Shown here: positions 1,568 to 60,068 of the stretch, piece after piece
Layout of the letters: each line of letters opens with the position of its first letter
Position numbering within the stretch: the first letter of the stretch is position 1
From: Ophelia neglecta
Lineage: Eukaryota
Direction of reading: 5' to 3'
Length of the DNA stretch: 64,000 nucleotides
Assembly: GCA_965285935.1 (NCBI GenBank)
Contig: OZ260665.1
Location: 41,602,001 to 41,666,000 of the forward strand
Notes under the pieces: model-generated
Told to the model about the DNA's origin: nothing
Seen by the model: the letters and a program-made list of their open reading frames with translations, nothing else
Databases searched by the model: none
Program-made: the position numbers and the translations under genes

Positions 1568-4500
1568 CTGTAGTTATTGTGGTGGAAGTGGTAGTAGAAA
1601 TGTCATCACTTTGCAAATGTGCAGGGTGAGTAGCAACTGGCAATTCTGGAGACCGGCTAGTGGAATGCATATTAGTAGATGTATCACTGATTATTTCTCC
1701 CATCTCAGGACATTTGGCCAACAAAAAATCTTCCTTTTCAGCTACAGCTGGGTCAATTGGCTCAGGAACAGAGTACACATCTTCTGGCATAATACCACTT
1801 TGAACATTCTGCAGATCTCTGTCATCATCAGTAACAAGCGTGTAGTCTGAGGGAGAAGGAGGTCGGTCTGAACTTGAAACACTAGTCACACTGGCAGCAA
1901 GGGCAGCAGCTTCAATAGACTGCTCAATGAAAATTTGCTGTGATGTGTCAGTACCGAGCCTGCCCTCAGATTCCTGCTCTAGATCAGCCTCCAGGGTATA
2001 GTCTGTGGGAGAAAGGGGACGTCTTCCACATAAAACTCCTTCATCATCGCCAGTAGGACTTACATCCTGAGAATCAAAGTCACTAGGAGGTTTTGAGCCC
2101 CGCTGTGCCTCCAGAGACAAGGAGGCCTCAAGCTTATATTTACGCTTCACAGGTACTTCATCAAAGTTAAAATCATCCTTATATTCTTGAGTCTCGCTTG
2201 CATTATTTGTGTCACTGATAAAAGTAGTCTGTGGCCCTCTTTGCAACTGTACAATAGCTATTTCCTGAAATTCTGCATCTACCTGTCCTGCTTCAATTTC
2301 TGCGGTCTTTTCACGCACTTTTTCCATATCGACATCTCCAGAGTTTTCACTAAAGTATAGTTCATTATCTGTGGGGCTCTGAATAAGTGGACTTGCCTCA
2401 ACAATTGCAATAGATGGGGCAATAAGCCCAGTACTCTGAGAGCCAGACTGAGATGGGGTTTCCTGTCTGGCATGGTCTGTTTCTTCAGTAACAAGAACAG
2501 ATGCAATGTTTTGTGGTTCAGCAACACATTCCTCAGAATAATCAAAATCTGGACTCTTTGACAGTGCAATATCAGAGGCTGATTGTAGGAAAACCTGCAT
2601 TACTGGCTCTTGGAACTCTTGTCTATCACTACTCTCCTGTCTAATCTCAAATTCTGAAATATCAATAAATTCACCATTTTTGTCAAAATTAGTACCATTC
2701 ATTTTAACACCAGAACCACCACCAACTGCTTCGGTTAAAACTTGGCAAGTGGACTCTGCTGCAACACTACCTTGAACACTGTCTTCAGATACTTTACCTA
2801 TTATTACTTGCGTAATATCAATATTTATAGAATCTACTTCACTACCTTCAAATCCAAATTTATCTTTTTCCATTGATTCTGCAATACCCTTTTCTGGTTG
2901 TTCGTCTATTTCTCTACCTATTAAGTCTTTATCAAACACATATATAACGTCTTCTTTGTCAGGCTTATCTAAGTCTTTAAGTGTGTCATTGTAAGGCAGG
3001 TCTTCAACGTCTTCCTGACTTATGTCACCAGTGTCAGATATATCTTCTATTTCTGCCTTTTCTACCAGATCAGATTCCTGGCTCCTCGCTTCTGCATCTT
3101 CGTCAAGGTCATCACATTGGGGTGCTTTCCCGTCTTCCAGTGGGGCCCCATCATCCAATGGAAGTTCTTCTGGCTCCTCCTGTAATCCTTCTGGAGGAGC
3201 CCCATACTCGGCATCATGAAATTCTTCATCCTCATCTTCAATATACACATCCTCGACAGTCTCTTGGAAGTCCTCTAGGCCTTGCTGCTCAGGGTCTTCA
3301 AGACTGGCAGATACGAAATGCTTTTCATCAAATGCAGCTGGTTCCAACGAAACCTTCATTTTGACCTTCTTCTGAGGAACATTTTCCAGTTGTTGAGTGA
3401 CATACTTCTCGAAATCTCCTTGACTGACTTGCACTGGGGTAACATCTGCACCAGATGTCTGGAATGTTTGCTTGCTTGGTTGAGGCTCAGCCAACAAGTG
3501 ATCCTGGGATGCAACAACATATCCTGATGGCTGTTCAACAAAACCAGGTACATAAGCAGGACTTTCCATTACCGTTCGCTCAGTTTTCCGTGACTGCTGA
3601 TTTGTTTTAGTAACTGTTTTTTTAAGAACACTGCCATCTGGTTGGACCTCTTCCACTTCCTCACTGAAAGTCAACGCATGAGGTTCAGTTAATGATGCAT
3701 CAGCATACACTCTCATTTCTGGAGCAATTGCACCAGCCATGGTAACTGGACTTTCATCTTCTGTTTGCGGGCCTTCCATGACAACTCTTTTGATTATTGT
3801 TTGTCTCTGTCTTCTTTTAATTACTTTCCTGATAATAATTCTTCCATCTGGAAGTGTCTCCTCATATTCCTTAATTTCTGTTTCTACCTGCGGCTCCCCT
3901 TCAATAGTATCACTGTATACTCGAATACTAGCTCTTGATGATACAGAGTCAGCAGGAGATACCAATTCACCAGGAGAGGTGAGGGACTGTGCAGGTGACA
4001 AAATTCCCTGGGAGTCACTGAAGCCAGACCGTAGACTTGAAGTTTCAGACATCTCAGATTCAGGAAGTTCTTCAGTTATCACATCTTCAAAAACTTCACC
4101 ATCAGGCCCAACTTTTCTTACTTTTCTAGTTACCATTCTCTTTACTCTAGCTTTGATGAGCTTCCTTCTAACTACAGTGCCATCAGGAAGAATTTCCTCA
4201 ACTTCCTCAAACCCAGCTGATGGACCAAAACATGGGGTTGAAACTTGTTTTGGAGCAACATCAAAAGAAACAGAATCGGCTGGTTTTTCAAATTCATCTC
4301 GGGATTGAGCTGGTGCATCATGCGATGGTAACTCTTCCTTTAAATCAAATCCTTCATGAATATGTGTTTTCTCCAATTGTATTTCATCAACTGGAAGGGC
4401 ACATACTTTCTCTACCTTTAATACTCCAGCAGATTTTTCTTCTGGTGAAACATCAGATGTAGTCTCTGACAGAAGAGAAATACCAATTGTCTTTGTTTCA

Positions 4501-7500
4501 TCCTGAAAAAGAGCAGGTTCTGCACTAGGAAAGATCACAATAGAAGGTTTATCCACTACATCTGAGTTATCTCTTTGCCCTTCATCAACTGCTGGCATAT
4601 TGGCAGACATATCAGGGGAAGGTGTCACCTGTATATCCTCATTTACTGTAAGTTCTGATATTTTGACCACTGGCTCTTCATCAGTTATAATTGGAGCTTC
4701 CTCAACGGCAGGACAGATAGGAGGAGTTGTGTCAAACTCGGTCTCGAATGTCACTTGTATTTTTTCCTCCCGAGGAGTGGCTCCCGTGTCAACAACTGCT
4801 GGAAAGACTGGCTTTTCAGAATCCATTGATTCCAACAGCTCTTCTGATACTTTCGTCAATTCTTCTGACTCCTCAGTCAATTCAGTTTTGAGCACTTCAG
4901 TTGCAGATGAAATTTCAGTTGAGGAATATTGTTGTTCTTGCCTACACATAACAGACTCTGTTCTTTGTTCGTCCTCTAGAATTAATACTCCAGCAGTGAT
5001 ATCAGAGTCTTTGATGATGGCGACGGGTGACTCTGCTCTCACCCCTATAACTATCCCACCATCTATGATTGCCCTGGCAGGCAGTTGTACTGGTGTCGGT
5101 GGTATATCTGCGGGTCTAGCCTCGCACACTGGATAAACAAAGTCGTCAGCAGGGCAGATGAGAGGAGTAGTCTCATACTCGGTCTCAATTTTCTTTTGTA
5201 TTTCTTCCTCTACAGGAGTGAGTTCGGTGTCCAGAACTGCTGGAATAACTGGCTTTTCAGAAACAATTGTTTCAACCAGCTCTTCTGATACTTCCTTTAC
5301 TTCTTCCGACTCTTCAGTTAGTTCAGTTTTGAACACTTCAGTTGAAGATTTAGTGGAAGAATATTGATATTCTTGCTCAGATATTACAGACTTTACTTTT
5401 TGTGTATCCTCCACAATTATCACGCCAGCAGAGATATCAGAGTCTTTGATGACAGTGACGGGTGATGCTGCTCTCACCCCAATAACTATTCCACCATCTA
5501 TGATTGCCCTGGCAGGTATTTCTGCTGGTGACTGTGGTATATACTCGGTTCTATCTTCACACACTGGATGATCAAAGACGTCTGAAGTTTTATCAACTGG
5601 TGCGGTCAACGCTTCCACCTTTACATCTTCAATTGTTGAAAAATCTGTTTCTTTGACAACAGACTCTTCATCAGGCTTAATTGGAGCTTCCACAGCCGCA
5701 GGTGAGATGGGTGGAGGTGTCTCAAAATCTGTCTCGATTGTCACTCGTATGTCTTCCTCTACAGGAGTGGGTTCGGTGTCCAGAACTGCTGGAATAACTG
5801 GCTTTTCAGAAACAATTGTTTCAACCAACTCTTCTGATACTTCCTTTACTTCATCCGACTCTTCAGTAAATTCAGTTTTGAACACTTCGGTCGAAGTTTC
5901 AGTGGAAGAATATTGATATTCTTGCTCAGATATTACAGACTCTACTTTTCGTGTATCCTCCACAATTATCACGCCAGCAGAGATACCAGAGTCTTTGACG
6001 ATAGTGACGGGTGATGCTGCTCTCACCCCAATAACTATTCCACCATCTATGATTGCCCTGGAAGGTATTTCTGCTGGTGACTGTGGTATATCCTCGGTTA
6101 TATCTTCACACACTGGATGATCAGAGACGTCTGAAGCTTTATCAACTGGTGCGGTTAACGCTTCCACCTTTACATCCTCAATTGTTGAAAGTTCAGTTTC
6201 TTTGTCCACAGACTCTTCATCAGGCTTAATTGGAGCTTCCACAACCGCAGGTGAGATGGGTGGAGCTGTCTCAAAATCTGTCTCTATTGTCACTTGTATG
6301 TCTTCCTCTACAGGAATGGGTTCGGTGTCCAGAACTGCTGGAATAACTGGCTTTTCAGCAACAATTGCTTCAACCAGCTCTTCTGATACTTCCTTTACTT
6401 CTTCCGACTCATCAGTAAATTCAGGTTTGAACCCTTCAGTTGAAGTTTCAGTGGAGGAATATTGATATTCTTGCTCAGATATTACAGACTCTACTTTTCG
6501 TGTATCCTCCACAATTATCACGCCAGCAAAGATATCAGAGTCTTTGATGACAGTGACGGGTGATGCTGCTCTCACTCCAATAACTATTCCACCATCTATG
6601 ATTGCCCTGGTAGGTATTTCTGCTGGTGACTGTGGTGTATCCACGGTTATACCTTCACACACTGGATGATCATAGACTGCTGAAGCTTTATCAACTGGTG
6701 CGGTTAACGCTTCCTCCTTTACATCATCCTCAATTGTTGAAAGTTCAGTTTCTTTGACCACAGACTCCTCATCAGGTTTAAGTGGAGCTTCCACAACCGC
6801 TGGTGAGATGGGTGGAGGTGTTTCAAAATCTGTCTTGATTGTCACTTGTATGTCTTCCTCTACTGGAGTGGGTTCGGTGTCCAGAACTGCTGGAATAACT
6901 GGCTTTTCAGAAACAATTGTTTCAACCAACTCTTCTGATACTTCCTTTACTTCTTCGGACTCTTCAGTAAATTTAGTTTTGAACACTTCAGTCGAAGTTT
7001 CAGTGGAAGAATATTGATATTCTTGCTCAGATATTACAGACTCTACTTTTCGTGTATCCTCTACAATTATCACGCCAGCAGAGATATCAGAGTCTTTGAC
7101 GATAGTGACGGGTGATGCTGCTCTCACCCCAATAACTATTCCACCATCTATGATTGCCCTGGCAGGTATTTCTGTTGGTGACTGTGGTGTATCCTCGGTT
7201 ATACCTTCACACACTGGATGATCATAGACTGCTGAAGCTTTATCAACTGGTGCGGTTAACGCTTCCTGCTTTACATCATCCTCAATTGTTGAAAGTTCAG
7301 TTTCTTTGACCACAGACTCCTCATCAGGTTTAAGTGGAGCTTCCACAACCGCTGGTGAGATGGGTGGAGGTGTCTCAAAATCTGTCTTGATTGTCACTTG
7401 TATGTCTTTCTCTACTGGAGTGGGTTCGGTGTCCAGAACTGCTGGAATAACTGGCTTTTCAGAAACAAATGTTTCAACCAACTCTTCTGACACTTCCTTT

Positions 7501-10500
7501 ACTTCTTCCGACTCTTCAGTAAATTCAGTTTTGAACACTTCAGTCGAAGTTTCAGTGGAAGAATATTGATATTCTTGCTCAGATATTACAGACTCTACTT
7601 TTCGTGTATCCTCCACAATTATCACGCCAGCAGAGATATCAGAGTCTTTGACGATAGTGACGGGTGATGCTGCTCTCACCCCAATAATTATTCCACCATC
7701 TATGATTGCCCTGGCAGGTATTTCTGCTGGTGACTGTGGTATATCCTCGGTTATATCTTCACACACTGGATGGTCAGATTCTTTGACCACAGACTCCTCA
7801 TCAGGTTTAAGTGGATCTTCCACAACCGCTGGTGAGATGGGTAGAGATGTCTCAAAATCTGTCTTGATTGTCACTTGCATGTCTTCCTCTACTGGAGTGG
7901 GTTCGGTGTCCAGAACTGCTGGAATAACTGGCTTTTCAGAAACAATTGTTTCAACCAACTCTTCTGATACTTCCTTTACTTTTTCCGACTCTTCAGTAAA
8001 TTCAGTTTTGAACACTTCAGTCGAAGTTTCAGTGGAAGAATATTGATATTCTTGCTCAGATATTACAGACTCTACTTTTCGTGTTTCCTCCACAATTATC
8101 ACGCCAGCAGAGATATCAGAGTCTTTGACGATAGTGACGGGTGATGCTGCTCTCACCCCAATAACTATTCCACCATCTATGATTGCCCTGGCAGGTATTT
8201 CTGCTGGTGACTGTGGTGTATCCTCGGGTATACCTTCACACACTGGATGATCATAGACTGCTGAAGCTTTATCAACTGGTGCGGTTAACGCTTCCTCCTT
8301 TACATCATCCTCAATTGTTGAAAGTTCAGTTTCTTTGACCACAGACTCCTCATCAGGTTTAAGTGGAGCTTCCACAACCGCTGGTGAGATGGTTGGAGGT
8401 GTCTCAAAATCTGTCTTGATTGTCACTTGTATGTCTTCCTCTACTGGAGTGGGTTCGGTGTCCAGAACTGCTGGAATAACTGGCTTTTCAGAAACAATTG
8501 TTTCAACCAACTCTTCTGATACTTCCTTTACTTCTTCCGACTCTTCAGTAAATTCAGTTTTGAACACTTCAGTCGAAGTTTCAGTGGAAGAATATTGATA
8601 TTCTTGCTCAGATATTACAGACTCTACTTTTCGTGTATCCTCCACAATTATCACGCCAGCAGAGATATCAGAGTCTTTGACGATAGTGACGGGTGATGCT
8701 GCTCTCACCCCAATAACTATTCCACCATCTATGATTGCCCTGGCAGGTATTTCTGCTGGTGACTGTGGTATATCCTCGGTTATATCTTCACACACTGGAT
8801 GATCAGAGACGTCTGAAGCTTTATCAACTGGTGCGGTTAACGCTTCCACCTTTACATCCTCAATTGTTGAAAGTTCAGTTTCTTTGTCCACAGACTCTTC
8901 ATCAGGCTTAATTGGAGCTTCCACAACCGCAGGTGAGATGGGTGGAGGTGTCTCAAAATCTGTTTCGATTGTCACTTGTATGTCTTCCTCTACAGGAATG
9001 GGTTCGGTGTCCAGAACTGCTGGAATAACTGGTTTTTCAGAAACAATTGCTTCAACCAGCTCTTCCGATACTTCCTTTACTTCTTCCGACTCATCAGTAA
9101 ATTCAGTTTTGAACACTTCAGTTGAAGTTTCACTGGAGGAATATTGATATTCTTGCTCAGATATTACAGACTCTACTTTTCGTGTACACTCCACAATTAT
9201 CACGCCAGCAGAGATATCAGAGTCTTTGATGACAGTGACGGGTGATGCTGCTCTCACCCCAATAACTATTCCTCCATCTATGATTGCCCTGGCAGGTATT
9301 TCTGCTGGTGACTGTGGTATATCCTCGGTTATACCTTCACACACTGGATGATCATAGACTGCTGAAGCTTTATCAACTGGTGCGGTTAACGCTTCCTGCT
9401 TTACATCCTCAATTGTTGAAATTTCGGTTTCTTTGACCACAGACTCCTCATCAGGTTTAAGTGGAGCTTCCACAACCGCAGGTGAGATGGTAGGAGGTGT
9501 CTCAATATCTCTCTCGATTGTCACTTGTATGTCTTCCTCTACAGGAGTGGGATCGGTGTCCAGAACTGCTGGAATAATTGGCTTTTCAGAAACAATTGTT
9601 TCAACCAACTCTTCTGATACTTCCTTGACTTCATCCGACTCTTCAGTAAATTCAGTTTTGAACACTTCGGTCGAAGTTTCAGTGGAAGAATATTCATATT
9701 CTTGCTCAGATATTACAGACTCTACTTTTCGTGTGTCCTCCACAATTATCACGCCAGCAGAGATATCAGAGTCTTTGACGATAGTGACGGGTGATGCTGC
9801 TCTCACCCCAATAACTATTCCACCATCTATGATTGCCCTGGCAGGTATTTCTGCTGGTGACTGAGGTATATCCTCGGCTATATCTTCACACACTGGGTGA
9901 TCAGAGACGTCTGAAGCTTTATCAACTGGTGCGGTTAATGCTTCCACCTTTACATCCTCAATTGTTGAAAGTTCAGTTTCTTGGTCCACAGACTCTTCAT
10001 CGGGCTTAATTGGAGCTTCCACAACCGCATGTGAGATGGGTGGAGGTGTCTCAAAATCTGTTTCGATTGTCACTGGTATGTCTTCCTCAACAGGAATGGG
10101 TTCGGTGTCCATAACTGCTGGAATAACTGGCTTTTCAGAAACAATTGCTTCAACCAGCTCTTCCGATACTTCCTTTACTTCTTCCGACTCATCAGTAAAT
10201 TCAGTTTTGAACACTTCAGTTGACGTTTCACTGGAGGAATATTGATATTCTTGCTCAGATATTACAGACTCTACTTTTCGTGTATCCTCCACAATTATCA
10301 CGCCAGCAGAGATATCAGAGTCTTTGATGACAGTGACGGGTGATGCTGCTCTCACCCCAATAACTATTCCTCCCTCTATGATTGCCCTGGCAGGTATTTC
10401 TGCTGGTGACTGTGGTATATCCTCGGTTATACCTTCACCCACTGGATGATCATAGACTGCTGAAGCTATATCAACTGGTGCGGTTAACGCTTCCTGCTTT

Positions 10501-13500
10501 ACATCCTCAACTGTTGAAATTTCAGTTTCTTTGACCACAGACTCCTCACCAGGTTTAAGTGGAGCTTCCACAACCGCAGGTGAGATGGGTGGAGGTGTCT
10601 CAAAATCTGTTTCGATTGTCACTTGTATGTCTTCCTCTACTGGAGTGGGTTCGGTGTCCAGAACTGCTGGAATAACTGGCTTTTCAGAAACAATTGCTTC
10701 AACCAGCTCTTCCGATACTTCCTTGACTTCTTCCGACTCATCAGTAAATTCAGTTTTGAACACTTCAGTTGAAGTTTCACTGGAGGAATATTGATATTCT
10801 TGCTCAGATATTACAGACTCTACTTTTCGTGTATCCTCCACAATTATCACGCCAGCAGAGATATCAGAGTCTTTGATGACAGTGACGGGTGATGCTGCTC
10901 TCACCCCAATAACTATTCTTCCATCTATGATTGCCCTGGCAGGTATTTCTGCTGGTGACTGTGGTATATCCTCGGTTATACCTTCACACACTGGATGATC
11001 ATAGACTGCTAAAGCTTTATCAACTGGTGCGGTTAACGCTTCCTGCTTTACATCCTCAATTATTGAAATTTTGGTTTCTTTGACCACAGACTCCTCATCA
11101 GGTTTAAGTGGAGCTTCCACAACCGCAGGTGAGATGGGTGGAGGTGTCTCAATATATCTCTCGATTGTCACTTGTATGTCTTCCTCTACAGGAGTTGGAT
11201 CGGTGTCCAGAACTGCTGGAATAATTGGCTTTTCAGAAACAATTGTTTCAACCAACTCTTCTGATACTTCCTTTACTTCATCCGACTCTTCAGTAAATTC
11301 AGTTTTGAACACTTCGGTCGAAGTTTCAGTGGAAGAATATTCATATTCTTGCTCAGATATTACAGACTCTACTTTTCGTGTGTCCTCCACAATTATCACG
11401 CCAGCAGAAATATCAGAGTCTTTGACGATAGTGACGGGTGATGCTGCTCTCACCCCAATAACTATTGCACCATCTATGATTGCCCTGGCAGGTATTTCTG
11501 CTGGTGACTGAGGTATATCCTCGGCTATATCTTCACACACTGGGTGATCAGAGACGTCTGAAGCTTTATCAACTGGTGCGGCTAACGCTTCCACCTTTAC
11601 ATCCTCAATTGTTGAAAGTTCAGTTTCTTGGTCCACAGACTCTTCATCAGGCTTAATTGGAGCTTCCACAACCGCATGTGAGATGGGTGGAGGTGTCTCA
11701 AAATCTGTTTCGATTGTCACTGGTATGTCTTCCTCTACAGGAATAGGTTCGGTGTCCAGAACTGCTGGAATAACTGGCTTTTCAGAAACAATTGCTTCAA
11801 CCAGCTCTTCCGATACTTCCTTTACTTCTTCCGACTCATCAGTAAATTCAGTTTTGAACACTTCAGTTGAAGTTTCACTGGAGGAATATTGATATTCTTG
11901 CTCAGATATTACAGACTCTACTTTTCGTGTACACTCCACAATTATCACGCCAGCAGAGATATCAGAGTCTTTGATGATAGTGACGGGCGATGCTGCTCTC
12001 ACCCCAATAACTATTCCTCCATCTATGATTGCCCTGGCAGGTATTTCTGCTGGTGACTGTGGTATATCCTCGGTTATACCTTCACCCACTGGATGATCAT
12101 AGACTGCTGAAGCTTTATCAACTGGTGTGGTTAACGCTTCCTGCTTTACATCCTCAATTGTTGAAATTTCAGTTTCTTTGACCACAGACTCCTCATCAGG
12201 TTTAAGTGGAGCTTCCACAACCGCAGGTGAGATGGTTGGAGGTGTCTCAAAATCTGTTTCGATTGTCACTTGTATGTCTTCCTCTACTGGAGTGGGTTCG
12301 GTGTCCAGAACTGCTGGAATAACTGGCTTTTCAGAAACAATTGTTTCAACCAACTCTTCTGATACTTCCTTTACTTCATCCGACTCTTCAGTAAATTCAG
12401 TTTTGAACACTTCGGTCGAAGTTTCAGTGGAAGAATATTGATATTCTTGCTCAGATATTACAGACTCTACTTTTCGTGTATCCTCCACAATTATCACGCC
12501 AGCAGATATATCAGAGTCTTTGACGATAGTGACGGGTGATGCTGCTCTCACCCCAATAACTATTCCACCATCTATGATTGCCCTGGCAGGTATTTCTGCT
12601 GGTGACTGTGGTATTTCCTCGGTTATACCTTCATCCACTGGATGATCATAGACTGCTGAAGCTTTATCAACTGGTGCGGTTAACGCTTCCTGCTTTACAT
12701 CCTCAATTGTTGAAAGTTCAGTTTCTTTGACCACAGACTCCTCATCAGGTTTAAGTGGAGCTTCCACAACCGCAGGTGAGATGGTTGGAGGTGTCTCAAA
12801 ATCTGTTTCGATTGTCACTTGTATGTCTTCCTCTACTGGAGTGGGTTCGGTGTCCAAAACTGCTGGAATAACTGGCTTTTCAGAAACAATTGTTTCAACC
12901 AACTCTTCTGATACTTCCTTTACTTCATCCGACTCTTCAGTAAATTCAGTTTTGAACACTTCGGTCGAAGTTTCAGTGGAAGAATATTGATATTCTTGCT
13001 CAGATATTACAGACTCTACTTTTCGTGTATCCTCCACAATTATCACGCCAGCAGATATATCAGAGTCTTTGACGATAGTGACGGGTGATGCTGCTCTCAC
13101 CCCAATAACTATTCCACCATCTATGATTGCCCTGGCAGGTATTTCTGCTGGTGACTGTGGTATATCCTCGGTTATATATTCACACACTGGATGATCAGAG
13201 ACGTCTGAAGCTTTATCAACTGGTGCGGTTAACGCTTCCACCTTTACATCCTCAATTGTTGAAAGTTCAGTTTCTTTGTCCACAGACTCTTCATCAGGCT
13301 TAATTGGAGCTTCCACAACCGCAGGTGAGATGGGTGGAGCTGTCTCAAAATCTGTCTCGATTGTCACTTGTATGTCTTCCTCTACAGGAATGGATTCGGT
13401 GTCCAGAACTGCTGGAATAACTGGTTTTTCAGAAACAATTGTTTCAACCAACTCTTCTGATACTTCCTTTACTTCATCCGACTCTTCAGTAAATTCAGTT

Positions 13501-16500
13501 TTGAACACTTCAGTTGAAGTTTCACTGGAAGAATATTGATATTCTTGCTCAGATATTACAGACTCTACTTTTCGTGTATCCTCCACAATTATCACGCCAG
13601 CAGATATATCAGAGTCTTTGACGATAGTGACGGGTGATGCTGCTCTCACCCCAATAACTATTCCACCATCTATGATTGCCCTGGCAGGTATTTCTGCTGG
13701 TGACTGTGGTATATCCTCGGTTATATATTCACACACTGGATGATCAGAGACGTCTGAAGCTTTATCAACTGGTGCGGTTAACGCTTCCACCTTTACATCC
13801 TCAATTGTTGAAAGTTCAGTTTCTTTGTCCACAGACTCTTCATCAGGCTTAATTGGAGCTTCCACAACCGCAGGTGAGATGGGTGGAGCTGTCTCAAAAT
13901 CTGTCTCGATTGTCACTTGTATGTCTTCCTCTACAGGAATGGGTTCGGTGTCCAGAACTGCTGGAATAACTGGCTTTTCAGAGACAATTGCTTCAACCAG
14001 CTCTTCTGATACTTCCTTTACTTCTTCCGACTCATCAGTAAATTCAGGTTTGAACACTTCAGTTGAAATTTCACTGGACGAATATTGATATTCTTGCTCA
14101 GATATTACAGACTCTACTTTTCGTGTATCCTCCACAATTATCACACCAGCAGAGATATCAGAGTCTTTGATGACAGTGACGGGTGATGCTGCTCTCACCC
14201 CAATAACTATTCCTCCATCTATGATTGCCCTGGCAGGTATTTCTGCAGGTGACTGTGGTGTATCCTCGGTTATACCTTCACACACTGGATGATCATAGAC
14301 TGCTGAAGCTTTATCAACTGGTGCGGTTAACGCTTCCACCTTTACATCCTCAATTGTTGAAATTTCAGTTTCTTTGTTCACAGACACCTCATCAGACTTA
14401 ATTCGAGCTTCCACAACCGCAGGTGAGATGGGTGGAGGTGTCTCAAAATCTGTTTCGATTAGCACTTGTATGTCTTCCTCTACTGGAGTGGGTTCGGTGT
14501 CCAGAACTGCTGGAATAACTGGCTTTTCAGAAACAATTGCTTCAACCAGCTCTTCTGATACTTCCTTTACTTCTTCCGACTCATCAGTAAATTCAGTTTT
14601 GAACACTTCAGTTGAAGTTTCAGTGGAGGAATATTGATATTCTTGCTCAGATATTACAGACTCTACTTTTCGTGTATCCTCCACAATTATCACGCCAGCA
14701 GTGATATCAGAGTCTTTGATGACAGTGACGGGTGATGCTGCTCTCACCCCAATAACTATTCCACCATCTATGATTGCCCTGGCAGGTATTTCTGCTGGTG
14801 ACTGTGGTGTATCCTCGGTTATATCTTCACACACTGGATGATCAGAGACGTCTGAAGCTTTATTAACTGGTGTGGTTAACACTTCCTGCTTTACATCCTC
14901 AATTGTTGAAAGTTCAGTTTCTAAGACCACAGACTCCTCATCAGGTTGAAGTGGAGCTTCCACAACCGCAGGTGAGATGGGTGGAGGTGTCCCAAAATCT
15001 GTCTCGCTTGTCACTTGTATGTCTTCCTCTACAGGAGTGGGTTCGGTGTCCAGAACTGCTGGAATAACTGGCTTTTCAGAAACAATTGTTTCAACCAACT
15101 CTTCTGATACTTCCTTGACTTCTTCCGACTCATCAGTAAATTCAGTATTGAACACTTCAGTTGAAGTTTCACTGGAGGAATATTGATATTCTTGCTCAGA
15201 TATTACAGACTCTACTTTTCGTGTATCCTCTACAATTATCACGCCAGCAGAGATATCAGAGTCTTTGACGATGGTGACGGGTGATGCTGCTCTCACCCCA
15301 ATAACTATTCCACCATCTATGATTGCCCTGGCAGGTATTTCTGCTGGTGACTGTGGTATATCCTCGGTTATACCTTCACCCACTGGATGATCATAGACTG
15401 CTGAAGCTTTATCAACTGGTGCGGTTAACGCTTCCTCCTTTACATCCTCAATTGTTGAAAGTTCAGTTTCTTTGACCACAGACTCCTCATCAGGTTTAAG
15501 TGGAGCTTCCACAACCGCTGGTGAGATGGGTGGAGGTGTCTCAAAATCTGTCTCGCTTGTCACTTGTATGTCTTCCTCTACAGGAGTGGGTTCGGTGTCC
15601 AGAACTGCTGGAATAACTGGCTTTTCAGAAACAATTGTTTCAACCAACTCTTCTGATACTTCCTTGACTTCTTCCGTCTCTTCAGTAAATTCAGTTTTGA
15701 ACACTTCAGTTGAAATTTTAGTGGAAGAATATTGATATTCTTGCTCAGATATTACAGACTCTACTTTTCGAGTATCCTCCACAATTATCAAGCCAGCAGA
15801 GATATCAGAGTCTTTGATGTTAGGGACGGGTGATGCTGCTCTCACCCCAATAACTATTCCACCATCTATGATTGCCCTGGCAGGTATTTCTGCTGGTGAC
15901 TGTGGTATATCCTCGGTTATATCTTTACACACTGGATGATCAGAGACTGCTGAAGCTTTATCAACTGGTGCGATTAACGCTTCCACCTTTACATCCTTAA
16001 TTGTTGAAAGTTCAGTTCCTATGTTCACAGACTCTTCATCAGGCTTAATTGGAGCTTCCACAAGCGAAGGAGAGATGGGTGGAGGTGTCTCAAAATCTGT
16101 CTCGATTGTCACTAGTATGTCTTCCTCTACAGGAATGGGTTCGGCGTCCAGAACTGCTGGAATAACTGGCTTTTCAGAATCAATTGCTTCAACCAGCTCT
16201 TCTGATACTTCCTTTACTTCTTCCGACTCATCAGTAAATTCAGTTTTGAACACTTCAGTTGAAGTTTCAGTGGAGGAATATTGATATTCTTGCTCAGATA
16301 TTACAGACTCAACTTTTCGTGTATCCTCCACAATTATCACGCCAGCAGAGATATCAGAGTCTTTGATGACAGTGACGGGTGATGCTGCTCTCACCCCAAT
16401 AACTATTCCACCATCTATGATTGCCCTGGCAGGTATTTTTGCTGGTGACTGTGGTATATCCTCCGTTCTATCTTCACACACTGGATGATCATAGACCGCT

Positions 16501-19500: not shown

Positions 19501-20383
19501 TCATCAATGAGTTGGTTTCGCCTGTCAATCGATGCATGCGCACTCGTAATATTATCCTTAATCATTGCTCTGGCACCTTGTTCGTCTAATACTAATACAT
19601 CCGTTGTTTGATTCAAAGCAACCAGTGAACAAAATTCGTCTTCATCAAGATCTAACAATTCGTCCTCCTGTAGCCTCAATGTAGGTGTAATGACCTCTCT
19701 GGAATGAGCTGACTGTTCAATTACTAGCAGGTCAATGTCAGTGGTGCCTGGGCTGGCAAGTTTTGCTGTTTCTGATTTAGTTACATTTGAAACTTCTTCA
19801 TCAATGTGAATTTCACTTATTTCAGGTACTGTCATGTCATTTGGTTTTTGTACAAAAGACACCTGGGGTGGTTGGAACACAAAAGAAGGGTCAGATACTG
19901 ATGTTTCTGTAATGGGTGACTCTTTTTCCATTACATGAAGTTCAGGACTCCACTTTTGTTGATCATTAACCCCCGCTTGTGTAGGTAATTCTGTTACCTG
20001 TTCTGGCTTGGCATGAAACAATTCAGCGGAATTGTCAAATTCCTCAGCACGACCGTGTTCAAGTTCCATTCTAGGTTCAGATTTCATTTCAACAATGCTT
20101 TTTTCAACTAAAGCTAAAAATTCATCTTCAGACATTTTACTCACATCTTCCTCAACCACTGGGGCATATTCTGTGCTTTCTACAGGAGGCTCATGATCCT
20201 GACTCTCAAACCTCAATATCAATTTGGTAGCATTTTTGTCTTCCACTAACCTAACCTGGTCCTGTCTAATAATTTCTTTATCTGGGGTTAAAAAAATCCT
20301 ATCTGGGCTTTCACTGTGTGCTCTTTCTTCAAAATGTGTCACTAGAGCAGAAACTGGAATTTGGATATCTTCAGCAGGTTTAC
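1568..20383 (-). CDS. ANK: Giant exon C (18,816 bp, about 6,272 aa); alternative in-frame acceptor at 20593 possible
   Basis: Lies inside ORF 1548..20555; acceptor TTTGTATACAG|GT, donor ACAG|GTACTA; phase 1-1. Confidence 0.87.
4650..17560 (-). repeat. Coding tandem array, about 24 x 549 bp (183 aa), acidic and Pro/Ser/Thr-rich
   Basis: The anchor ARAIIDGGIVIGVRAASPV recurs 24 times; spacing is mostly 549 bp, with 552, 540, 477 and 435 bp variants, all multiples of 3. Confidence 0.95.
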
Positions 20384-21208: not shown

Positions 21209-21277
21209 CTTCGTCTGTGTCCACAGTTTCCTTGGTGACATCAATATCTGTTGGTGTAGATGCACTAGCTAGCACAT
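21209..21277 (-). CDS. ANK: Small cassette exon
   Basis: Acceptor AAATTTTAG|, donor GAAG|GTAGAC; 69 bp, phase 1-1; DVLASASTPTDIDVTKETVDTDE. Confidence 0.75.
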
Positions 21278-21797: not shown

Positions 21798-21908
21798 CTT
21801 CAGTATGAGCCTCAAGTCCATAGTATCTCACATAATCATCTTCATCAACAGGGGTACTAAGGTCTTCAGTAATTGTAATAGTTGGTGTCCCATCATCACC
21901 AAAGTCAA
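21798..21908 (-). CDS. ANK: Small cassette exon
   Basis: Acceptor ATTTCCAG|, donor GAAG|GTAGCC; 111 bp, phase 1-1; VDFGDDGTPTITITEDLSTPVDEDDYVRYYGLEAHTE. Confidence 0.8.
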
Positions 21909-22722: not shown

Positions 22723-22785
22723 CTTGTTGTTCTCTTTCTAGGCCCAGATCATCGTCAAATGGTTGGTCATCTCCATACCGAGGTG
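22723..22785 (-). CDS. ANK: Small cassette exon
   Basis: Acceptor TAAACAG|, donor AAG|GTAAAT; 63 bp, phase 1-1; APRYGDDQPFDDDLGLEREQQ. Confidence 0.78.
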
Positions 22786-43100: not shown

Positions 43101-46100
43101 GTTCATCTATTTGCACCTTTTTAACAGTGCTTGTTTTAACTGTTTTCCTTGACCATGTTCCATCAGGGAGAGTTTGTTCCGAGTCTTGCACGGACACCTT
43201 TACTTGCACATTATCAACATCTGGAGAGAGTATGCCCTCCGGTAATTCGGTCACCTCTTCTAGAATCTCTGTGCCCACTACTTTTTCTGATTCATTGGCA
43301 GTTTCAATACCACCACTAATGGTCTTTTCTATAATTGGTTTGTAATGGGTGACAGTAGTAGTTTTGGTTTTGACAGTGGTTCCATCATCCAGTAAGTCCT
43401 CTCTTTCTTTAGTATCAGTCCTTGTGGTCACGTCTCCCTCCATCACATCAGTCTTGGTCTCGGATTCTTTCAAAGATATTTCCTGTTCGATTTCTTTGGG
43501 TGCACAGATTTCTTCTGCCTTTAGTTGAATGGGTACTTCATCGACTTGTGCTACTTTCTGCTCCAGTTCCACTGGTGGTTCTACTGCCTGCACCTTTTTA
43601 ACAGTGGATGTTTTCACTGTTTTCCTTGACCATGTACCATCCGGGAGAGTTTGGTCAGACTCTTGCACGGACACTTTTACATCAAGATTATCTCCTTCGG
43701 TGGAGTGGATACCCTCTGATAATTCAATCACATCTTCCAGAACTTCTGTGCCTAATACTTGTTCTGATTCATTAACAGTTTCAATACCATCACTAATCGT
43801 TTTTTCATTGATTGGTTTGTAATGTGTGACAATAGTAGTTTTAGTTTTAACGGTGGTTCCATCATCTAGTACCTCCTCACTTTCCTTCGTGTCTGTCCTT
43901 GTGGTCACTTCTCCTTCTATCACTTCTGTCTTGGCCTCTGGTTCTTTCAAAGTGAGTTCCTGTTCAATTTCTCTTGGTGCACCTATGTCTTCTGCCATTA
44001 GTTGAATAGCTTCTTCTTCGATGTGTGCTACTTTTTGATCAAGTTCCACATGCGGTTCATCTGTTTGCACCTTTTTAACAATGGTTGTTTTAACCGTTCT
44101 TCTCGACCATGTTCCATCAGGGAGAGTTTGTTCTGAGTCTTGCACAGACACTTTCACTTCCACATTATCCATATCTGGAGAGTGTATACCCTCCGGTAAT
44201 TCAGTCACCTCTTCCAGAACTTCGGTGCCTACAACTTGTTCAGATTCATTCTCAGTTTCAATACCATCACTAATCTTTTTTTCTATAATTGGTTTGTAAT
44301 GGGTGACAGTAGTAGTTTTGGTTTTGACAGTGGTTCCATCATCCAGTAAGTCCTCTCTTTCTTTAGTATCAGTCCTTGTGGTAACATCTCCCTCTACCAC
44401 TTCTGTCTTGGCCTCGGGTTCTTTCAAAGATATTCCCAGTTCAATTTCTTTGGGTGCACCCATTTCTTCTGCCGTTAGTTGAATGGGTATTTCTTCGACT
44501 TGTGCTACTTTCTGTTCAAATTCCACTGGTGGTTCAACTGTGTGCATTTTTTTAACAGTGGTTGTTTTCACTGTTTTCTTTGACCATGTACCATCAGGGA
44601 GAGTTTGTTCAGACTCTTGTACGGACACCTTTACATCCAGCTTTTCTCCTTCGGGGGATTGGATACCCTCTGGTAATTCAGTCACCTCTTCCAGAACTTC
44701 GCTGCCTAATACTTGTTCAGATTCATTGACAGTTTCAATACCATCACTAATCTTTTTTTCTATGATTGGTTTGTAATGGGTGACAGTAGTAGTTTTGGTT
44801 TTGACAGTGGTTCCATCAGCCAGTAAATTCTCACTTTCTTTAATATCAGTCCTTGTGGTCACTTCTCCAATCACTTCTGTCTTGACCTCGGGTTCTTTAA
44901 AATATATTTCCTGTTCGATTTCTTTGGGTGCACTTGTGTCATCTGCAATTAGTTGTATAGTTTCTTCTTCGATGTGTGCTACTTTTTTATCTAGTTCCAC
45001 AGGCGGTTCAACTCTTTGCACCTTTTTAACAGTGGTTGTTTTGACCGTTTTCCTTGTCCATGTTTCATCAGGGAGAGTTTGTTCAGACTCTTGCACGGAC
45101 ACTTTCACTTCAACATTATCAACGTCTGGAGAGTGTATGCCCTCCGGTAATTCAGTCACCTCTTCTAGAATCTCTGTGCCTAATACTTGTTCTGATTCAT
45201 TGGCAGTTTCAATGCCTTCACTAGTTGTTTTTTCTACAATTGGTTTGTAATGGGTGACAGTAGTAGTTTTGGTTTTGACAGTGGTTCCATCATTCAGTAA
45301 ATCTTCACTTTCTTTAGTATCAGTTCTTGTGGTCACATCTCCTTCTATCACTTCTGTCTTGGCCTTGGGTTCTTTTACAAATATTTCCTTTTTAATTTCT
45401 CTAGGTGCACTTATTTCGTCTGCCACTAGTTGAATGGGTACTTCTTCGACCTGTGCTTCTTTCTGCTCAAGTTCATCTGGCGGTTCAACTGTGTGCATTT
45501 TTTTAACAGTGGTTGTTTTCACTTTTTTCCTTGTCCATGTTCCATCAGGAAGAGCTTGTTCTGAGTCTACAACGGACATTTTTACATCCAGATTATCTCC
45601 TTCCGGGGAGTGTATACCTACAGGTAATTCAGTCACCTCTTCAAGAATCTCTTGGCCTAAAACTTTGTCTGATTCATTGAGAGTTTCAATACCATCACTT
45701 ATCGTTTTTTCTACGATTGATTTATAATGGGTGACAGTGGTAGTTTTAGTTTTGACAGTAGTGCCATCATCCAGTACCTCCTCACTTTCTTTAGTATCAG
45801 TCTTTGTGGTCACCACTCCTTCTATTACTTCTGTCTTTGCCTCAGTTTGGGGTTTCATCGTTACAGCGGTAGTTCTTACAGCCTTTTTTACCCATGTTCC
45901 ATTTGCAAGTGTCTCCTCTGTTTCTTGAACAGTGGATTTTACTTCAAGATTGTCCCCGGTGGTGTCTGTAACTCCTTCTGGTAACTCCACTCTTTCTTCT
46001 AGTATTTCTTTTCCAAGGAATAATTCCTCTGTCTTTTCCGTTTCTTGTCCATCTAATGTGGTCGATGTTGTAATTGGTTGAAAGTAGTTAATTATTGTAC

Positions 46101-46820
46101 ATTTTGACTTTACTTTCGTTCCATTATCAAGGATATTTTCGGTTTCTTTTATCTCTGATTTTGTAACTATTTCGCCTTGGGAAACTTTACTCGTAGTTAC
46201 AGGACTTTGAAGCAAAGTTTCTTTCTTCAGTGTAGCGTAAATTGTTTTGACTGTTCTTCTTAGGTAAGACCCATTGCTTTGTACAGTTTCAGACGTTTCT
46301 GCCTCACATTCGTCTCTTTCAAGTTCTTCCAGATTTTCAAAAGAGACCCCAGCCGGCACATAAGTAATCTCTTCCTGGATGTCTGTGCCTATTAGTACTT
46401 CTTCAATGATATTGGAACTTTCTTCTATCCCATCAATGAATACTTTCTCAATATGTGGTTCAATGTGTGAAATAGTAGTCACTTTGGTTATAACGGTAGT
46501 GCCATCTTGTTGGGTTTGTTTATTTTCAGTTACACTACATTTATCTTGGATTGGTGCTTTTATAATATCCTTAGTCACTGCTGGTGGTTTTGTAGGAGGG
46601 ACAATTTCAGTTATGTCAGATTCTAGGATATGATCTGGAACAGTTTCAGAGTACACCATTTCAACAGGTTCTGCGGTTTGGGGGACACTAATCTTGTCAA
46701 CTAGTTCTTGTTCTATTCCAGTTGGGCTAACAGTGTCATAGCTTTCCTGAAATGTTCCCCTGTCTGGGTGTTCAGGGGTTGGAGTAAGTTCCCTGTCTTC
46801 TTCTGACGGAGAACCTCTTT
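40194..46820 (-). CDS. ANK: Giant exon A (6,627 bp, about 2,209 aa), E/T/V/K-rich repeats
   Basis: Lies inside ORF 40117..46911; acceptor ATTTCCAG|AA, donor CAAG|GTAGGA; phase 1-1. Confidence 0.88.
40260..45845 (-). repeat. Coding tandem array, 12 x 477 bp (159 aa), moderately diverged
   Basis: The THYKP anchor recurs every 474-477 bp from about 40483 to 45724; two further diverged modules extend to about 46550. Confidence 0.92.
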
Positions 46821-49573: not shown

Positions 49574-49642
49574 CTTGTTGAGGTGCAGTCTGCTGTTGAT
49601 CAGCAAGCTTGGCTGAAACTTGCTCTTCAGTTACTTCTTTAT
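49574..49642 (-). CDS. ANK: Ankyrin tail cassette exon
   Basis: Acceptor TTTTTTCCTCCCTATCATGTAG|, donor AAG|GTATAT; 69 bp, phase 1-1; DKEVTEEQVSAKLADQQQTAPQQ. Confidence 0.78.
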
Positions 49643-52016: not shown

Positions 52017-52109
52017 CTTGCTTGGGTGCCTTGTTAACAGTCTTTTTTATAACATGCCACTGTTGGCCGTCCCATACCTCCTCCACTTCATACTCTGGTG
52101 ACTCCAGGA
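52017..52109 (-). CDS. ANK: Ankyrin tail cassette exon, single hairpin-like motif
   Basis: Pyrimidine-rich acceptor ...CTCTGCAG|, donor AAG|GTATAA; 93 bp, phase 1-1; VLESPEYEVEEVWDGQQWHVIKKTVNKAPKQ. Confidence 0.8.
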
Positions 52110-54700: not shown

Positions 54701-54817
54701 CTCCGGGAGTGTAATCATCCTCAAACTCAGGGGGAGTCTGGGGGAACTCGGCTGGTGACTTTGAACCATCCATGTACTTAAATTTCTCTCCCACTTTTGC
54801 ATCAGCATATAGGTGTT
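54701..54817 (-). CDS. ANK: Ankyrin tail cassette exon (donor position uncertain)
   Basis: Acceptor TTTTACTTAAG|; 117 bp, phase 1-1; EHLYADAKVGEKFKYMDGSKSPAEFPQTPPEFEDDYTPG; weak tandem donors GAG|GTGGTGGTTGA. Confidence 0.68.
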
Positions 54818-55577: not shown

Positions 55578-55685
55578 CTGTTTTAGTAGTAGTTTTGGTA
55601 GTAGTCACATTGATTGTCAGGTCGGCAGGCGATGGGGGTGGTGTTTTTGTCTTTTTTTTGAGTCGGTGCTTGTCATGAATACCAT
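55578..55685 (-). CDS. ANK: Ankyrin tail cassette exon (basic, Thr-rich)
   Basis: Acceptor TTCTAG|, donor CAG|GTACAA; 108 bp, phase 1-1; DGIHDKHRLKKKTKTPPPSPADLTINVTTTKTTTKT. Confidence 0.72.
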
Positions 55686-56794: not shown

Positions 56795-56962
56795 CTTTAG
56801 GCTCCTCTTTAACAATCAATGAGTCTTCACTAGAGTCAGAGAGGCGGTCGTCCATCCCCGACACCTGAGAGGATTCCATGCGATCGATGAGGTCCTCAAT
56901 CGGAGTGCCTTCATGATCTTGCTTAGTTTCTGTTAGTATGTCCTCTCTTACAGTGACACCAC
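56795..56962 (-). CDS. ANK: Ankyrin tail cassette exon
   Basis: Acceptor GTTCACAG|, donor AAAG|GTACCT; 168 bp, phase 1-1; GGVTVREDILTETKQDHEGTPIEDLIDRMESS...KEEPK. Confidence 0.8.
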
Positions 56963-59852: not shown

Positions 59853-60068
59853 CTTCAAAATCATCAGTGGGTGTTTTTAACACCACGTCATCCATGCCTA
59901 TCTGCTCAGCAAAAACCGCAAGCGCCTCAGTTTTCTCTTTCGAAAGGTCCCTCTCTTCGTCACTTGTGGGTGACATGACCACCCCATGTCGTGGGTCGAC
60001 TTGGGGGGTGATCACATCAGAGTCATCAGAGAGGGCAAAGGGGCGTTGGGGCTGGGTCGGCGTCAGGT
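59853..60068 (-). CDS. ANK: Ankyrin tail cassette exon
   Basis: Acceptor CTCTGCTAG|, donor GAAG|GTATTT; 216 bp, phase 1-1; DLTPTQPQRPFALSDDSD...KTPTDDFE. Confidence 0.8.

What the first reader, a model, noticed from the sequence alone, without database searches (positions are those of the whole stretch)
1568..60068. Twelve consecutive phase 1-1 exons form a combinatorial cassette system for tail length
Seen: every exon from 60068 down to 1568 (216, 168, 108, 117, 93, 69, 6627, 14997, 63, 111, 69 and 18816 bp) has a length divisible by 3 and starts and ends in phase 1, so any subset can be skipped without a frameshift. Inference: splicing could tune the tail from a few hundred to over 13,000 aa, acting as an adjustable spacer or ruler (up to 2^12 theoretical combinations).
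Basis: partly seen in the sequence, partly recalled or inferred. Interest (0 to 1): 0.75.

Follow-up and report, generated by a model that had tools for sequence, protein, structure and literature searches.

The report
In-frame exon modules in giant ankyrin tail
The tail of this invertebrate's only detected ankyrin gene is built from a long run of exons, four of them giant, that can each be left out without breaking the reading frame; this fits the known way ankyrins make short and giant forms, but no RNA data exist to show which mixtures this animal makes.

Summary
Observation confirmed. All 12 intervals sit at the stated coordinates on the minus strand. Each has AG before it and GT after it, a length divisible by 3, and is open in phase 1.

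The gene is an ankyrin, with ZU5, UPA and death domains. It is the only UPA_2 locus found in the genome.

The phase-1 run extends past the window. A 1,131-nt exon and a fourth giant exon of 10,071 nt follow, and the run ends at a conserved next-to-last exon about 18.7 kb beyond the left edge.

Blind ranking of all 2,827 candidate intervals puts six small exons on top. The 216-nt exon scores highest of all. The 108-nt exon has only a short cross-species match, and the 93-nt exon has no support.

Intronless, mRNA-like contigs from relatives join several small exons directly to the conserved end block of giant exon B and then to the terminal exons.

Interpretation partly supported. In-frame skipping is real and probably used, as in Drosophila Ank2 and vertebrate ANK2/ANK3. 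The 2^12 combinations and the ruler role are untested, because no RNA run exists. Parallel note s1-743185 covers the same gene.

The parts
62840..63298 (-). Open frame holding the first UPA exon of the ankyrin gene
   Evidence: Pfam UPA_2, E 1e-22. Six-frame genome scan.
62373..62625 (-). Second UPA exon (acceptor phase 0, donor phase 1)
   Evidence: Pfam UPA_2, E 2e-22. Splice sites.
61889..62095 (-). Death-domain exon 1, 207 nt, phase 1-1
   Evidence: Pfam Death, E 4e-11. Acceptor score 12, donor CCACAG|gtaagc.
61325..61453 (-). Death-domain exon 2, 129 nt, phase 1-1 (donor choice tentative)
60894..61030 (-). Exon e1, phase 1 to 0 (acceptor at 61030 or 60994).
   Evidence: Score 21.5. 67% identical over 21 aa to the start of the L011 ORF, shuffle p 0.0005.
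60614..60686 (-). Exon e2, 73 nt, phase 0 to 1. It restores phase 1 before the run.
   Evidence: Score 18.6. Collinear match in L011, p 0.018.
59853..60068 (-).
   Evidence: Score 33.3. No counterpart in L011, L016 or L012.
56795..56962 (-). Exon 2, 168 nt, phase 1-1
   Evidence: Top-ranked of 2,827 candidates. 47% identical to L011 residues 43-95, p 0.0005.
55578..55685 (-). Exon 3, 108 nt, phase 1-1 (weakly supported)
   Evidence: Score 8.1, within the null range. Match to L011 residues 115-136, p 0.0025.
54701..54817 (-). Exon 4, 117 nt, phase 1-1
   Evidence: The 54817-54698 variant, 3 nt longer, ranks 5th with score 15.1. Weak L011 match, p 0.087, overlapping the exon 3 match.
52017..52109 (-). 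Exon 5, 93 nt, phase 1-1 (unsupported prediction)
   Evidence: Only a shorter variant scores 10.6, within the null range. No collinear match. Motif profile search negative.
49574..49642 (-). Exon 6, 69 nt, phase 1-1
   Evidence: Score 17.1. L011 residues 149-168, p 0.002. Similar peptide in P0034.
40194..46820 (-). Giant exon A, 6,627 nt, phase 1-1, about 12 copies of a 159-aa repeat
   Evidence: Homologous to B.
24495..39491 (-). Giant exon B, 14,997 nt, phase 1-1. It holds 394-aa repeats followed by the conserved ankyrin C-terminal block.
   Evidence: Donor CAG|gttagg is shared with relative L010.
25181..25198 (-). Acceptor-like site inside exon B, phase 1. The exon would start at 25181, at the start of the conserved block.
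   Evidence: The same position is the phase-1 acceptor of a stand-alone exon in L014, L015 and L017, and is kept inside the long ORFs of L010 and L013. The L011 match to B starts at 25179.
22723..22785 (-). Exon 9, 63 nt, phase 1-1
   Evidence: Score 15.1. Collinear PQYGDE match in L016, p 0.026.
21798..21908 (-). Exon 10, 111 nt, phase 1-1
   Evidence: Score 20.9, second of all candidates. No significant match in relatives.
21209..21277 (-). Exon 11, 69 nt, phase 1-1
   Evidence: Score 15.9. No significant match in relatives.
1568..20383 (-). Giant exon C, 18,816 nt, phase 1-1. It holds 183-aa repeats, a second copy of the C-terminal block, and a unique end.
   Evidence: Block 52% identical to that of B. 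The end matches P0024.
1..1112 (-). Exon 13 (1,131 nt in all, phase 1-1). It runs 18 bases past the window's left edge.

Best explanation
The window holds the tail-coding part of the only UPA-type ankyrin gene found in this genome.

After the death domain comes one asymmetric exon pair: e1 (phase 1 to 0) and e2 (phase 0 to 1). From there, every intron is in phase 1 for about 79 kb. The run ends at a conserved next-to-last exon that lies about 18.7 kb beyond the window's left edge. The 14 exons in between are therefore self-contained in-frame modules.

I read the uniform phase mainly as a footprint of how the tail grew. Modules were duplicated or inserted inside one ancestral phase-1 intron. 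A composition in which over 40% of codons start with G places AG|G sites in the phase-1 register.

Functionally, the arrangement lets one gene make both kinds of ankyrin. The short, ordinary form skips the giant modules. It probably enters the conserved C-terminal block through a phase-1 acceptor inside exon B at 25181, then goes on to the terminal exons. A small number of giant forms include A/B, C and/or D, as in other giant ankyrins.

Shown:
- the exon geometry
- the paralogy of the giant exons
- conservation of several small exons and of the block's boundaries
- the existence of short intronless forms in relatives

Inferred:
- that this animal skips these exons
- which combinations it makes
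- use of the internal acceptor
For: Gene identity: UPA_2 and Death domains. ZU5 lies 7 kb upstream on the same strand. There is a single UPA_2 locus in the 762-Mb genome.

Geometry.

Reality of the small exons: the six best loci among 2,827 candidates are reader exons, all phase 1-1, and they exceed the antisense and shuffle controls.

Growth by duplication: A and B align over about 2,200 aa at 35% identity. The end block of B and a block in C are 52% identical (E 3e-60). These are the only two copies in the genome.

Composition: 41-45% of codons start with G. AG dinucleotides are 2-6 times commoner in the phase-1 register.

Short forms in relatives: the 550-aa ORF of L011 reads e1, e2, exon 2, exon 3/4, exon 6, the block (window 25179-24652, 63% identity), then terminal exons that map to L003 (78% identity). 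L016 reads an exon-2-like piece, the block, an exon-9-like piece, then the last exon.

Conserved boundaries: phase-1 acceptors in L014, L015 and L017. A phase-1 donor is the top-scoring one in 18 of 58 loci and is present in 9 more. L010 has the same CAG|gttagg as here.

Precedent: Drosophila Ank2-S, -L and -XL arise from isoform-specific giant exons (passages of PMC6703079). Long exons after the death domain are found across protostomes (passages of PMC5135030). Symmetric exons are typical of disordered proteins and often arise by tandem duplication (abstract of PMC3632108).
Against: - No RNA exists for this organism. The three runs that hold the stretch are DNA: their contigs span the introns and show no joints.
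- L011, L012 and L016 come from other species, and none has a same-species genomic partner among the 58 loci. They therefore show that short forms exist in relatives, not alternative splicing of giant exons within one species. They could also be retrocopies.
- The acceptor-like site at 25181 is encoded by a conserved peptide (PSMSP), so its conservation may reflect the protein rather than splicing. In L011, about 12 residues separate the exon 6 match from the block.
- Exons 1, 5, 10 and 11 have no counterpart in the relatives' contigs.
- Twenty-one of the 58 loci end the block in a stop with no phase-1 donor nearby, so a terminal-exon use of such blocks exists in relatives.
- My splice score is a crude count against a recalled generic consensus.
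Confidence: 0.6

Rival explanations
1. The 12 or more modules are mixed freely and in a regulated way, so tail length is tuned over a wide range and acts as an adjustable spacer or ruler.
For: Every module is phase 1-1, so all subsets are in frame. Relatives' contigs differ in which small exons they carry: L011 has e1, e2, 2, 3/4 and 6, while L016 has exon-2-like and exon-9-like pieces. L012 carries repeat modules joined to the block and the next-to-last exon.
Against: No junction data exist for this species. The relatives' differences are between species. Known giant ankyrins use a few isoform classes, not free mixing (passages of PMC6703079). Phase symmetry is accounted for by duplication and composition. 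Nothing tested here bears on a ruler function.
Confidence: 0.12
2. The giant exons are mainly alternative last exons. B (and C) end the protein at the stop that follows their donor-like GT by 2 (and 6) codons. Each giant form then has its own tail with one copy of the C-terminal block, as with Drosophila Ank2-L versus Ank2-XL.
For: A stop follows the donor by 2 codons in B and by 6 in C. B and C each carry one copy of the block. Twenty-one of 58 relatives' loci end the block region in a stop, many reading ...HRPT*, with no phase-1 donor nearby. Drosophila L and XL have unique C-terminal tails.
Against: The donor CAG|gttagg after B is conserved in L010. Phase-1 donors follow the block in 27 of 58 loci. 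L011, L016 and L012 continue from the block into the conserved terminal exons. Downstream exons 13 and D, and the next-to-last exon, all accept phase 1. Poly(A)-like hexamers after the stops occur at about the rate I estimate for AT-rich introns.
Confidence: 0.2
3. All tail exons are constitutive. The gene makes one protein with a tail of about 17,550 aa.
For: All frames are open and all junctions are compatible.
Against: This is the only UPA-type ankyrin locus found, so every cell would depend on a titin-sized ankyrin. Relatives have short forms. Giant exons are optional in all studied ankyrins.
Confidence: 0.03

Closest known systems
Drosophila Ank2 (isoforms S, L, XL)
   Same: Giant exons lie downstream of the death domain. 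Short and giant forms come from one gene. The giant exons are repeat-rich (passages of PMC6703079, and of PMC5135030).
   Different: Here there are four giant exons (6.6, 15.0, 18.8 and 10.1 kb) instead of two. Two of them carry a copy of the conserved C-terminal block. Conserved terminal exons lie beyond all of them. I did not check the intron phases of the fly gene.
Protostome and echinoderm giant ankyrins surveyed by Jegla et al. 2016 (PMC5135030)
   Same: The long exon lies after the death domain. The composition is acidic and rich in Ser/Thr/Lys/Pro: S+E+T+D+K+P is about 53-56% here, against more than 55% in the paper. Repeat arrays are present. Annelids and molluscs are included in that survey.
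   Different: The paper's text reports one long exon in most loci and two in 8 of 23, with a mean of 8,103 +/- 4,850 bp. The word 'phase' does not occur in its main text.
Vertebrate ANK2/ANK3 giant exon (440- and 480-kDa ankyrin-B and -G)
   Same: A single optional giant exon switches between short and giant forms (abstract listings).
   Different: The vertebrate exon lies between the UPA and death domains (abstract of PMC12798937). There is one exon rather than an array, and Jegla et al. report no sequence homology between distant long exons.
Arrays of symmetric exons in disordered, modular proteins (such as the titin PEVK region; recalled)
   Same: A long run of in-frame modules encodes disordered repeats. 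The modules arose by tandem duplication and are prone to alternative splicing (abstract of PMC3632108).
   Different: The modules here range from 63 nt to 18.8 kb, and differential use has not been observed. The titin comparison is recalled and was not tested.

Membership tests
Canonical ankyrin (ANK repeats, ZU5-ZU5-UPA, death domain) | UPA domain of the ankyrin type | tested here: met
   Pfam UPA_2 on two exons, E 1e-22 and 2e-22. Confirmed by the genome scan.
Canonical ankyrin (ANK repeats, ZU5-ZU5-UPA, death domain) | Death domain after UPA | tested here: met
   Pfam Death, E 4e-11, at 61875-62126.
Canonical ankyrin (ANK repeats, ZU5-ZU5-UPA, death domain) | ZU5 domain upstream on the same strand | tested here: met
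   PF00791 at G000:C8:41673090-41673317 (minus strand), E 9.8e-20, about 7 kb beyond the window's right end. Only one ZU5 match was seen there.
Canonical ankyrin (ANK repeats, ZU5-ZU5-UPA, death domain) | 24 N-terminal ankyrin repeats | not tested
   The upstream loci L005-L009 were fetched but not scanned for ankyrin repeats.
Giant ankyrin (sense of Jegla et al. 2016) | Unusually long exon inside the gene, after the death domain in protostomes | tested here: met
   Three long exons in the window and one beyond it. All lie between the death domain and the conserved terminal exons.
Giant ankyrin (sense of Jegla et al. 2016) | Composition bias towards S, E, T, D, K and P | tested here: met
   The sum of the six residues is about 56% (A), 54% (B) and 53% (C). 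The paper states more than 55%, so this is a borderline pass. V is also high here.
Giant ankyrin (sense of Jegla et al. 2016) | Long exon optional, so that short and giant isoforms coexist | not testable with these tools
   No RNA run exists, and the DNA contigs show no joints. Indirect support only: short intronless contigs in other species.
Cassette-exon array (symmetric in-frame modules) | Each exon has a length divisible by 3 and the same phase at both ends | tested here: met
   12 of 12 in the window, plus exon 13 and exon D.
Cassette-exon array (symmetric in-frame modules) | Observed differential inclusion | not testable with these tools
   Same reason as above. Cross-species contigs differ in content, but they are not from one species.

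The most novel reading that the evidence does not exclude
One ankyrin gene carries at least 14 interchangeable in-frame modules. The animal really mixes them, with tails from a few hundred to about 17,550 residues. Full inclusion would then give the largest ankyrin known, a titin-scale protein. Internal phase-1 acceptors inside the giant exons would add further steps. The membrane skeleton would in effect have a programmable spacer.
Probability: 0.12. Interest if true: 0.7.

Novelty: new member of a known kind. Interest (0 to 1): 0.42.

Why it matters
Giant ankyrins organise axons, and their giant exons are known to be optional. This locus shows the principle in an extreme form. It has four giant exons and about 52.7 kb of tail coding sequence, all held in a single intron phase between conserved flanking exons. 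The conserved C-terminal block is embedded in a giant exon behind what looks like a retained acceptor. If confirmed by cDNA, it would be a clean natural system for asking how tail length and repeat type affect ankyrin function. It would also show how giant exons arise by duplication inside one intron. As it stands, it is a well-documented gene structure, not a new mechanism.

Tried and rejected
Checks that led nowhere:
- Pfam on pieces of A, B, C, D and exon 13 gave no credible domain.
- The run search found 3 holders, none of them RNA. Laying them showed DNA contigs only: no joints, no indels, and 9 single-letter differences in the single-copy part, none inside the three small exons. About 0.4 would be expected there, so this is uninformative.
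- I looked for same-species transcripts in the protein collections. The best identity was about 72-75%, so none were found.
- tblastn of the 150 best homologues on the window gave 2,076 matches. Only one lies upstream of exon A (P0034 on UPA), and none lies on a small exon. A short-word blastp of the small exons against those proteins gave nothing convincing except exon 6 against P0034 (E 0.003).
- I thought exon 5 might carry the E-x-L-x-D-G-T motif. A profile built from 48 distinct motif copies does not find it, so I dropped the idea.
- By eye, the starts of A and B looked alike. BLASTP finds nothing, so I dropped this too.
- I tested whether relatives' ORFs end in Gly because of a G|GT donor. 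Among the 82 of 103 matching ORFs that end soon after the block, only 6 end in G, about what I would expect from Gly frequency. The protein-level test is inconclusive. The DNA-level test replaced it.
- Poly(A)-like hexamers after the read-through stops occur at about the rate I estimate for AT-rich introns. Uninformative.
- There is no same-species genomic partner for L011, L016 or L012 among the 58 loci.
- For most of the 58 loci, the acceptor of the block exon could not be placed, because the best-scoring AG lies in coding-like sequence. I count only the three clear cases.
- Literature: 'phase' occurs 0 times in the main text of PMC5135030. A search for ankyrin with 'intron phase', 'symmetric exons' or '1-1 exons' listed nothing on ankyrin tails among the 12 of 57 papers shown. 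These two look-ups are the only basis for saying that I found no description of the phase pattern.

Full report
**What is in the window.**
The minus strand carries three very long open frames: 1548-20555, 24490-39429 and 40117-46911. They stand out in G+C, at 0.41-0.45 against 0.33-0.38 between them. Open frames at 61.3-63.3 kb match Pfam UPA_2 (E 1e-22 and 2e-22) and Death (E 4e-11).

The window is G000:C8:41602001-41666000, in a 762-Mb assembly. A ZU5 match lies 7 kb further upstream on the same strand. UPA_2 matches nowhere else in the genome. This is therefore the 3' half of the only UPA-type ankyrin gene that the six-frame scan finds. The 'tail' is everything after the death domain. Earlier notes of the scan call the genome probably annelid. 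I did not test that.

**Checking the observation.**
I searched the minus strand for intervals of the stated lengths that have AG before them and GT after them, and that are open when the first two bases complete a codon (phase 1 at both ends). The eight small ones do too: 56962-56795, 55685-55578, 54817-54701, 52109-52017, 49642-49574, 22785-22723, 21908-21798 and 21277-21209.

I listed all 2,827 such intervals, in any phase combination, in the 17 kb between the large exons. Each was scored with a codon log-odds trained only on sequence outside the window (exon D and exon 13) plus a crude splice-consensus count.
All are phase 1-1, with scores 15.1-30.9. The next loci score 10.6, 8.8 and 8.1.
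- The antisense strand reaches at most 13.0. The maxima of 20 block shuffles range from 8.1 to 15.1.
- The 216-nt exon scores 33.3.
- The 93-nt and 108-nt exons fall within the null range.

Upstream:
- The two death-domain exons are also phase 1-1: 207 and 129 nt.
They are e1 (61030 or 60994 to 60894, phase 1 to 0) and e2 (60686-60614, phase 0 to 1). Together they return the frame to phase 1.

Downstream:
- An exon of 1,131 nt runs from 1112 to 18 bases past the window edge. It is phase 1-1.
- There is a possible 84-nt phase 1-1 exon, with a borderline score of 14.1.
- A fourth giant exon, D, is non-repetitive and rich in S, E and D. With its phase-1 acceptor and the phase-1 donor CTGGTTTAG|gtaatttt it measures 10,071 nt.
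- The run ends at a 76-nt exon whose acceptor is in phase 1 and whose donor is in phase 2. A last exon with a stop follows. These lie about 18.7-19.2 kb beyond the left edge.

From e2 to that acceptor, every intron is phase 1 over about 79 kb. The 12 in-window exons sum to 41,454 nt (13,818 codons). With exon 13 and D the total is 52,656 nt (17,552 codons).

**What the giant exons are.**
- A holds about 12 copies of a 159-aa unit. B holds a 394-aa unit whose copies are about 85% identical. C holds a 183-aa unit.
- No Pfam domain is found in any of them.
- A and B are homologous along their length, at 35% identity over about 2,200 aa. C contains one stretch of that module type. D is unrelated.
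- The last roughly 320 aa of B form a block conserved in 166 proteins of the 1.84-billion-protein library. C carries a second copy, 52% identical (E 3e-60). These are the only two copies in the genome.
- So A, B and C are related by duplication, and duplication preserves phase.
- In these exons 41-45% of codons start with G. AG dinucleotides fall 2-6 times more often in the phase-1 register than in the other two. New AG|G boundaries would therefore tend to be phase 1.

**Evidence on use.**
No RNA run holds the stretch. The three holders are DNA, with contigs that cross the introns and show no joints. The protein collections hold nothing closer than about 75% identity.

A scan of metagenome contigs with the conserved block gave 58 loci from relatives, at 43-70% identity. 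Three of them carry no introns.

L011 has a 550-aa open frame followed by about 1.5 kb that is closed in that frame. Its frame reads, in order:
- e1, residues 1-21, 67% identity, shuffle p 0.0005;
- e2, residues 22-43, p 0.018;
- exon 2, residues 43-95, 47% identity, p 0.0005;
- a stretch at residues 107-136 that matches exon 3 (p 0.0025) or exon 4 (p 0.087);
- exon 6, residues 149-168, p 0.002;
- the block, which matches window 25179-24652 at 63% identity;
- the two terminal exons, which match my locus L003 at 78% identity.

L011 has no counterpart of the 216-nt exon, exon 5, either repeat array, exons 10-11, C, exon 13 or D.

L016 reads an exon-2-like piece (p 0.064), the block, an exon-9-like piece (PQYGDE..., p 0.026), then the last exon. 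L012 carries repeat modules joined to the block and to the next-to-last exon.

These contigs are most simply assembled transcripts, although retrocopies cannot be excluded. They come from different species, and none has a genomic partner among the 58 loci. They show that relatives make short forms that run from small tail exons into the block and on to the terminal exons. They do not show alternative splicing within one species.

**Boundaries of the block.**
Inside exon B, at 25181, there is an acceptor-like site in phase 1: cttccatgtctcctgcag|CC. The L011 match to B begins two bases away.
- In three relatives the frame upstream of the block is closed and reads as non-coding (L014, L015, L017). 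A phase-1 acceptor sits at the same place in all three.
- In two relatives with long open frames upstream (L010, L013), a comparable site is kept inside the frame.
- In the remaining loci the acceptor cannot be placed.

Downstream of the block, the 58 loci divide as follows:
- 18 have a phase-1 donor as the best-scoring one near the frame's end. In L010 it is CAG|gttagg, the same as here.
- 9 more have a phase-1 CAGCAG|gta that is outscored by a GT overlapping the stop.
- 6 show some other pattern.
- 3 are the intronless contigs.
- 1 runs off its contig.
- 21 end in a stop, many reading ...HRPT*, with no phase-1 donor nearby.

Many of these loci are near-duplicates, so they are loci, not species. 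The picture fits a block that is a stand-alone phase 1-1 exon in some lineages. In others, including this one, it is fused to a giant exon with its old acceptor possibly still usable. The caveat is that the site at 25181 is encoded by a conserved peptide (PSMSP), so the protein rather than splicing may be what is conserved.

**Interpretation.**
The functional reading is partly supported. In-frame skipping is possible for every module. This single ankyrin gene must also make ordinary ankyrin. Relatives have short forms.

What remains open is whether many combinations are used and whether length is tuned as a ruler. Known giant ankyrins use a few isoform classes. Drosophila ank2 encodes Ank2-S, Ank2-L (450 kDa) and Ank2-XL (1,200 kDa) from isoform-specific giant exons (passages of PMC6703079). 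Long exons after the death domain are found across protostomes and echinoderms, with two tandem long exons in 8 of 23 loci and a mean of 8,103 +/- 4,850 bp (passages of PMC5135030). Symmetric exons are typical of disordered proteins, often arise by tandem duplication, and are often alternative (abstract of PMC3632108).

I therefore read the uniform phase 1 mainly as a footprint of growth inside one phase-1 intron. It permits the familiar switch between short and giant forms, probably with a small number of isoforms (confidence 0.6).

The main rival is that B and C act as alternative last exons, because a stop follows their donors by 2 and 6 codons. This keeps some weight (0.2). The conserved donor and the relatives' contigs that continue past the block count against it.

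**Novelty.**
This is a new member of a known kind. It is a giant ankyrin of the protostome type with an unusually large and regular tail: four giant exons, all in phase 1. I found no paper describing the phase pattern, based only.

Noticed in passing
window 25181-25198 (-): There is a phase-1 acceptor-like site inside giant exon B, exactly where the conserved C-terminal block begins. It matches the real acceptor of a stand-alone exon in three relatives. It could let a short isoform enter B past its repeats.
   Followed up: partly
window 4390-4524 (-): A cluster of strong acceptor-like sites (scores 10-12, two of them in phase 1) lies at the boundary between the 183-aa repeats and the unique end of exon C. 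Only four sites in 40 kb of exon score 12 or more, and two of them are here. The other two, at 2002 and 1846, are explained by the P-x-S-P-x-D-Y-T-L peptide motif.
   Followed up: no
window 17608-17609 (-): TTCCAG|gtgaga, just upstream of the exon C repeats, scores 8 of 9 as a phase-1 donor. The same spot also scores 10 as an acceptor.
   Followed up: no
window 53172-54082: A 30-bp unit is repeated 30.6 times in tandem inside the intron between exons 4 and 5. It gives a 235-aa open frame on the plus strand. It is probably a minisatellite.
   Followed up: no
L002:8765 down to L003:8694 (minus strand), about 1.2-11.3 kb beyond the window's left edge: The fourth giant exon, D, is 10,071 nt, non-repetitive and rich in S, E and D. 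It has recurring S-S-S-L-x-E-F-E-R-L-E motifs near its end. The frame stays open for about 200 codons past the predicted donor, at first coding-like and then hydrophobic. It has no Pfam match.
   Followed up: partly
L003:750-1254 (minus strand), about 18.7-19.2 kb beyond the window's left edge: These are the conserved terminal exons of the gene: a 76-nt exon (phase 1 to 2) and the last exon with its stop. They are 78% identical to the end of a relative's mRNA-like contig.
   Followed up: yes
window 25582-25700: Contig depth in the DNA runs rises about 6-7 fold where the 394-aa repeats of exon B begin, and the contigs break there. The repeat copy number in B therefore rests on the assembly alone.
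   Followed up: no
loci L010-L067: Relatives carry two kinds of C-terminal-block loci. One kind is followed by a phase-1 donor. The other sits at the end of a long open frame that stops at ...HRPT. Some contig-name prefixes hold both kinds, so the block may be duplicated in relatives as well.
   Followed up: partly
protein P0034 (1,848 aa): A relative's protein runs from the last UPA exon straight into tail sequence with an exon-6-like peptide. Pfam finds no death domain in it. Skipping the two phase 1-1 death-domain exons would give such a form.
   Followed up: no
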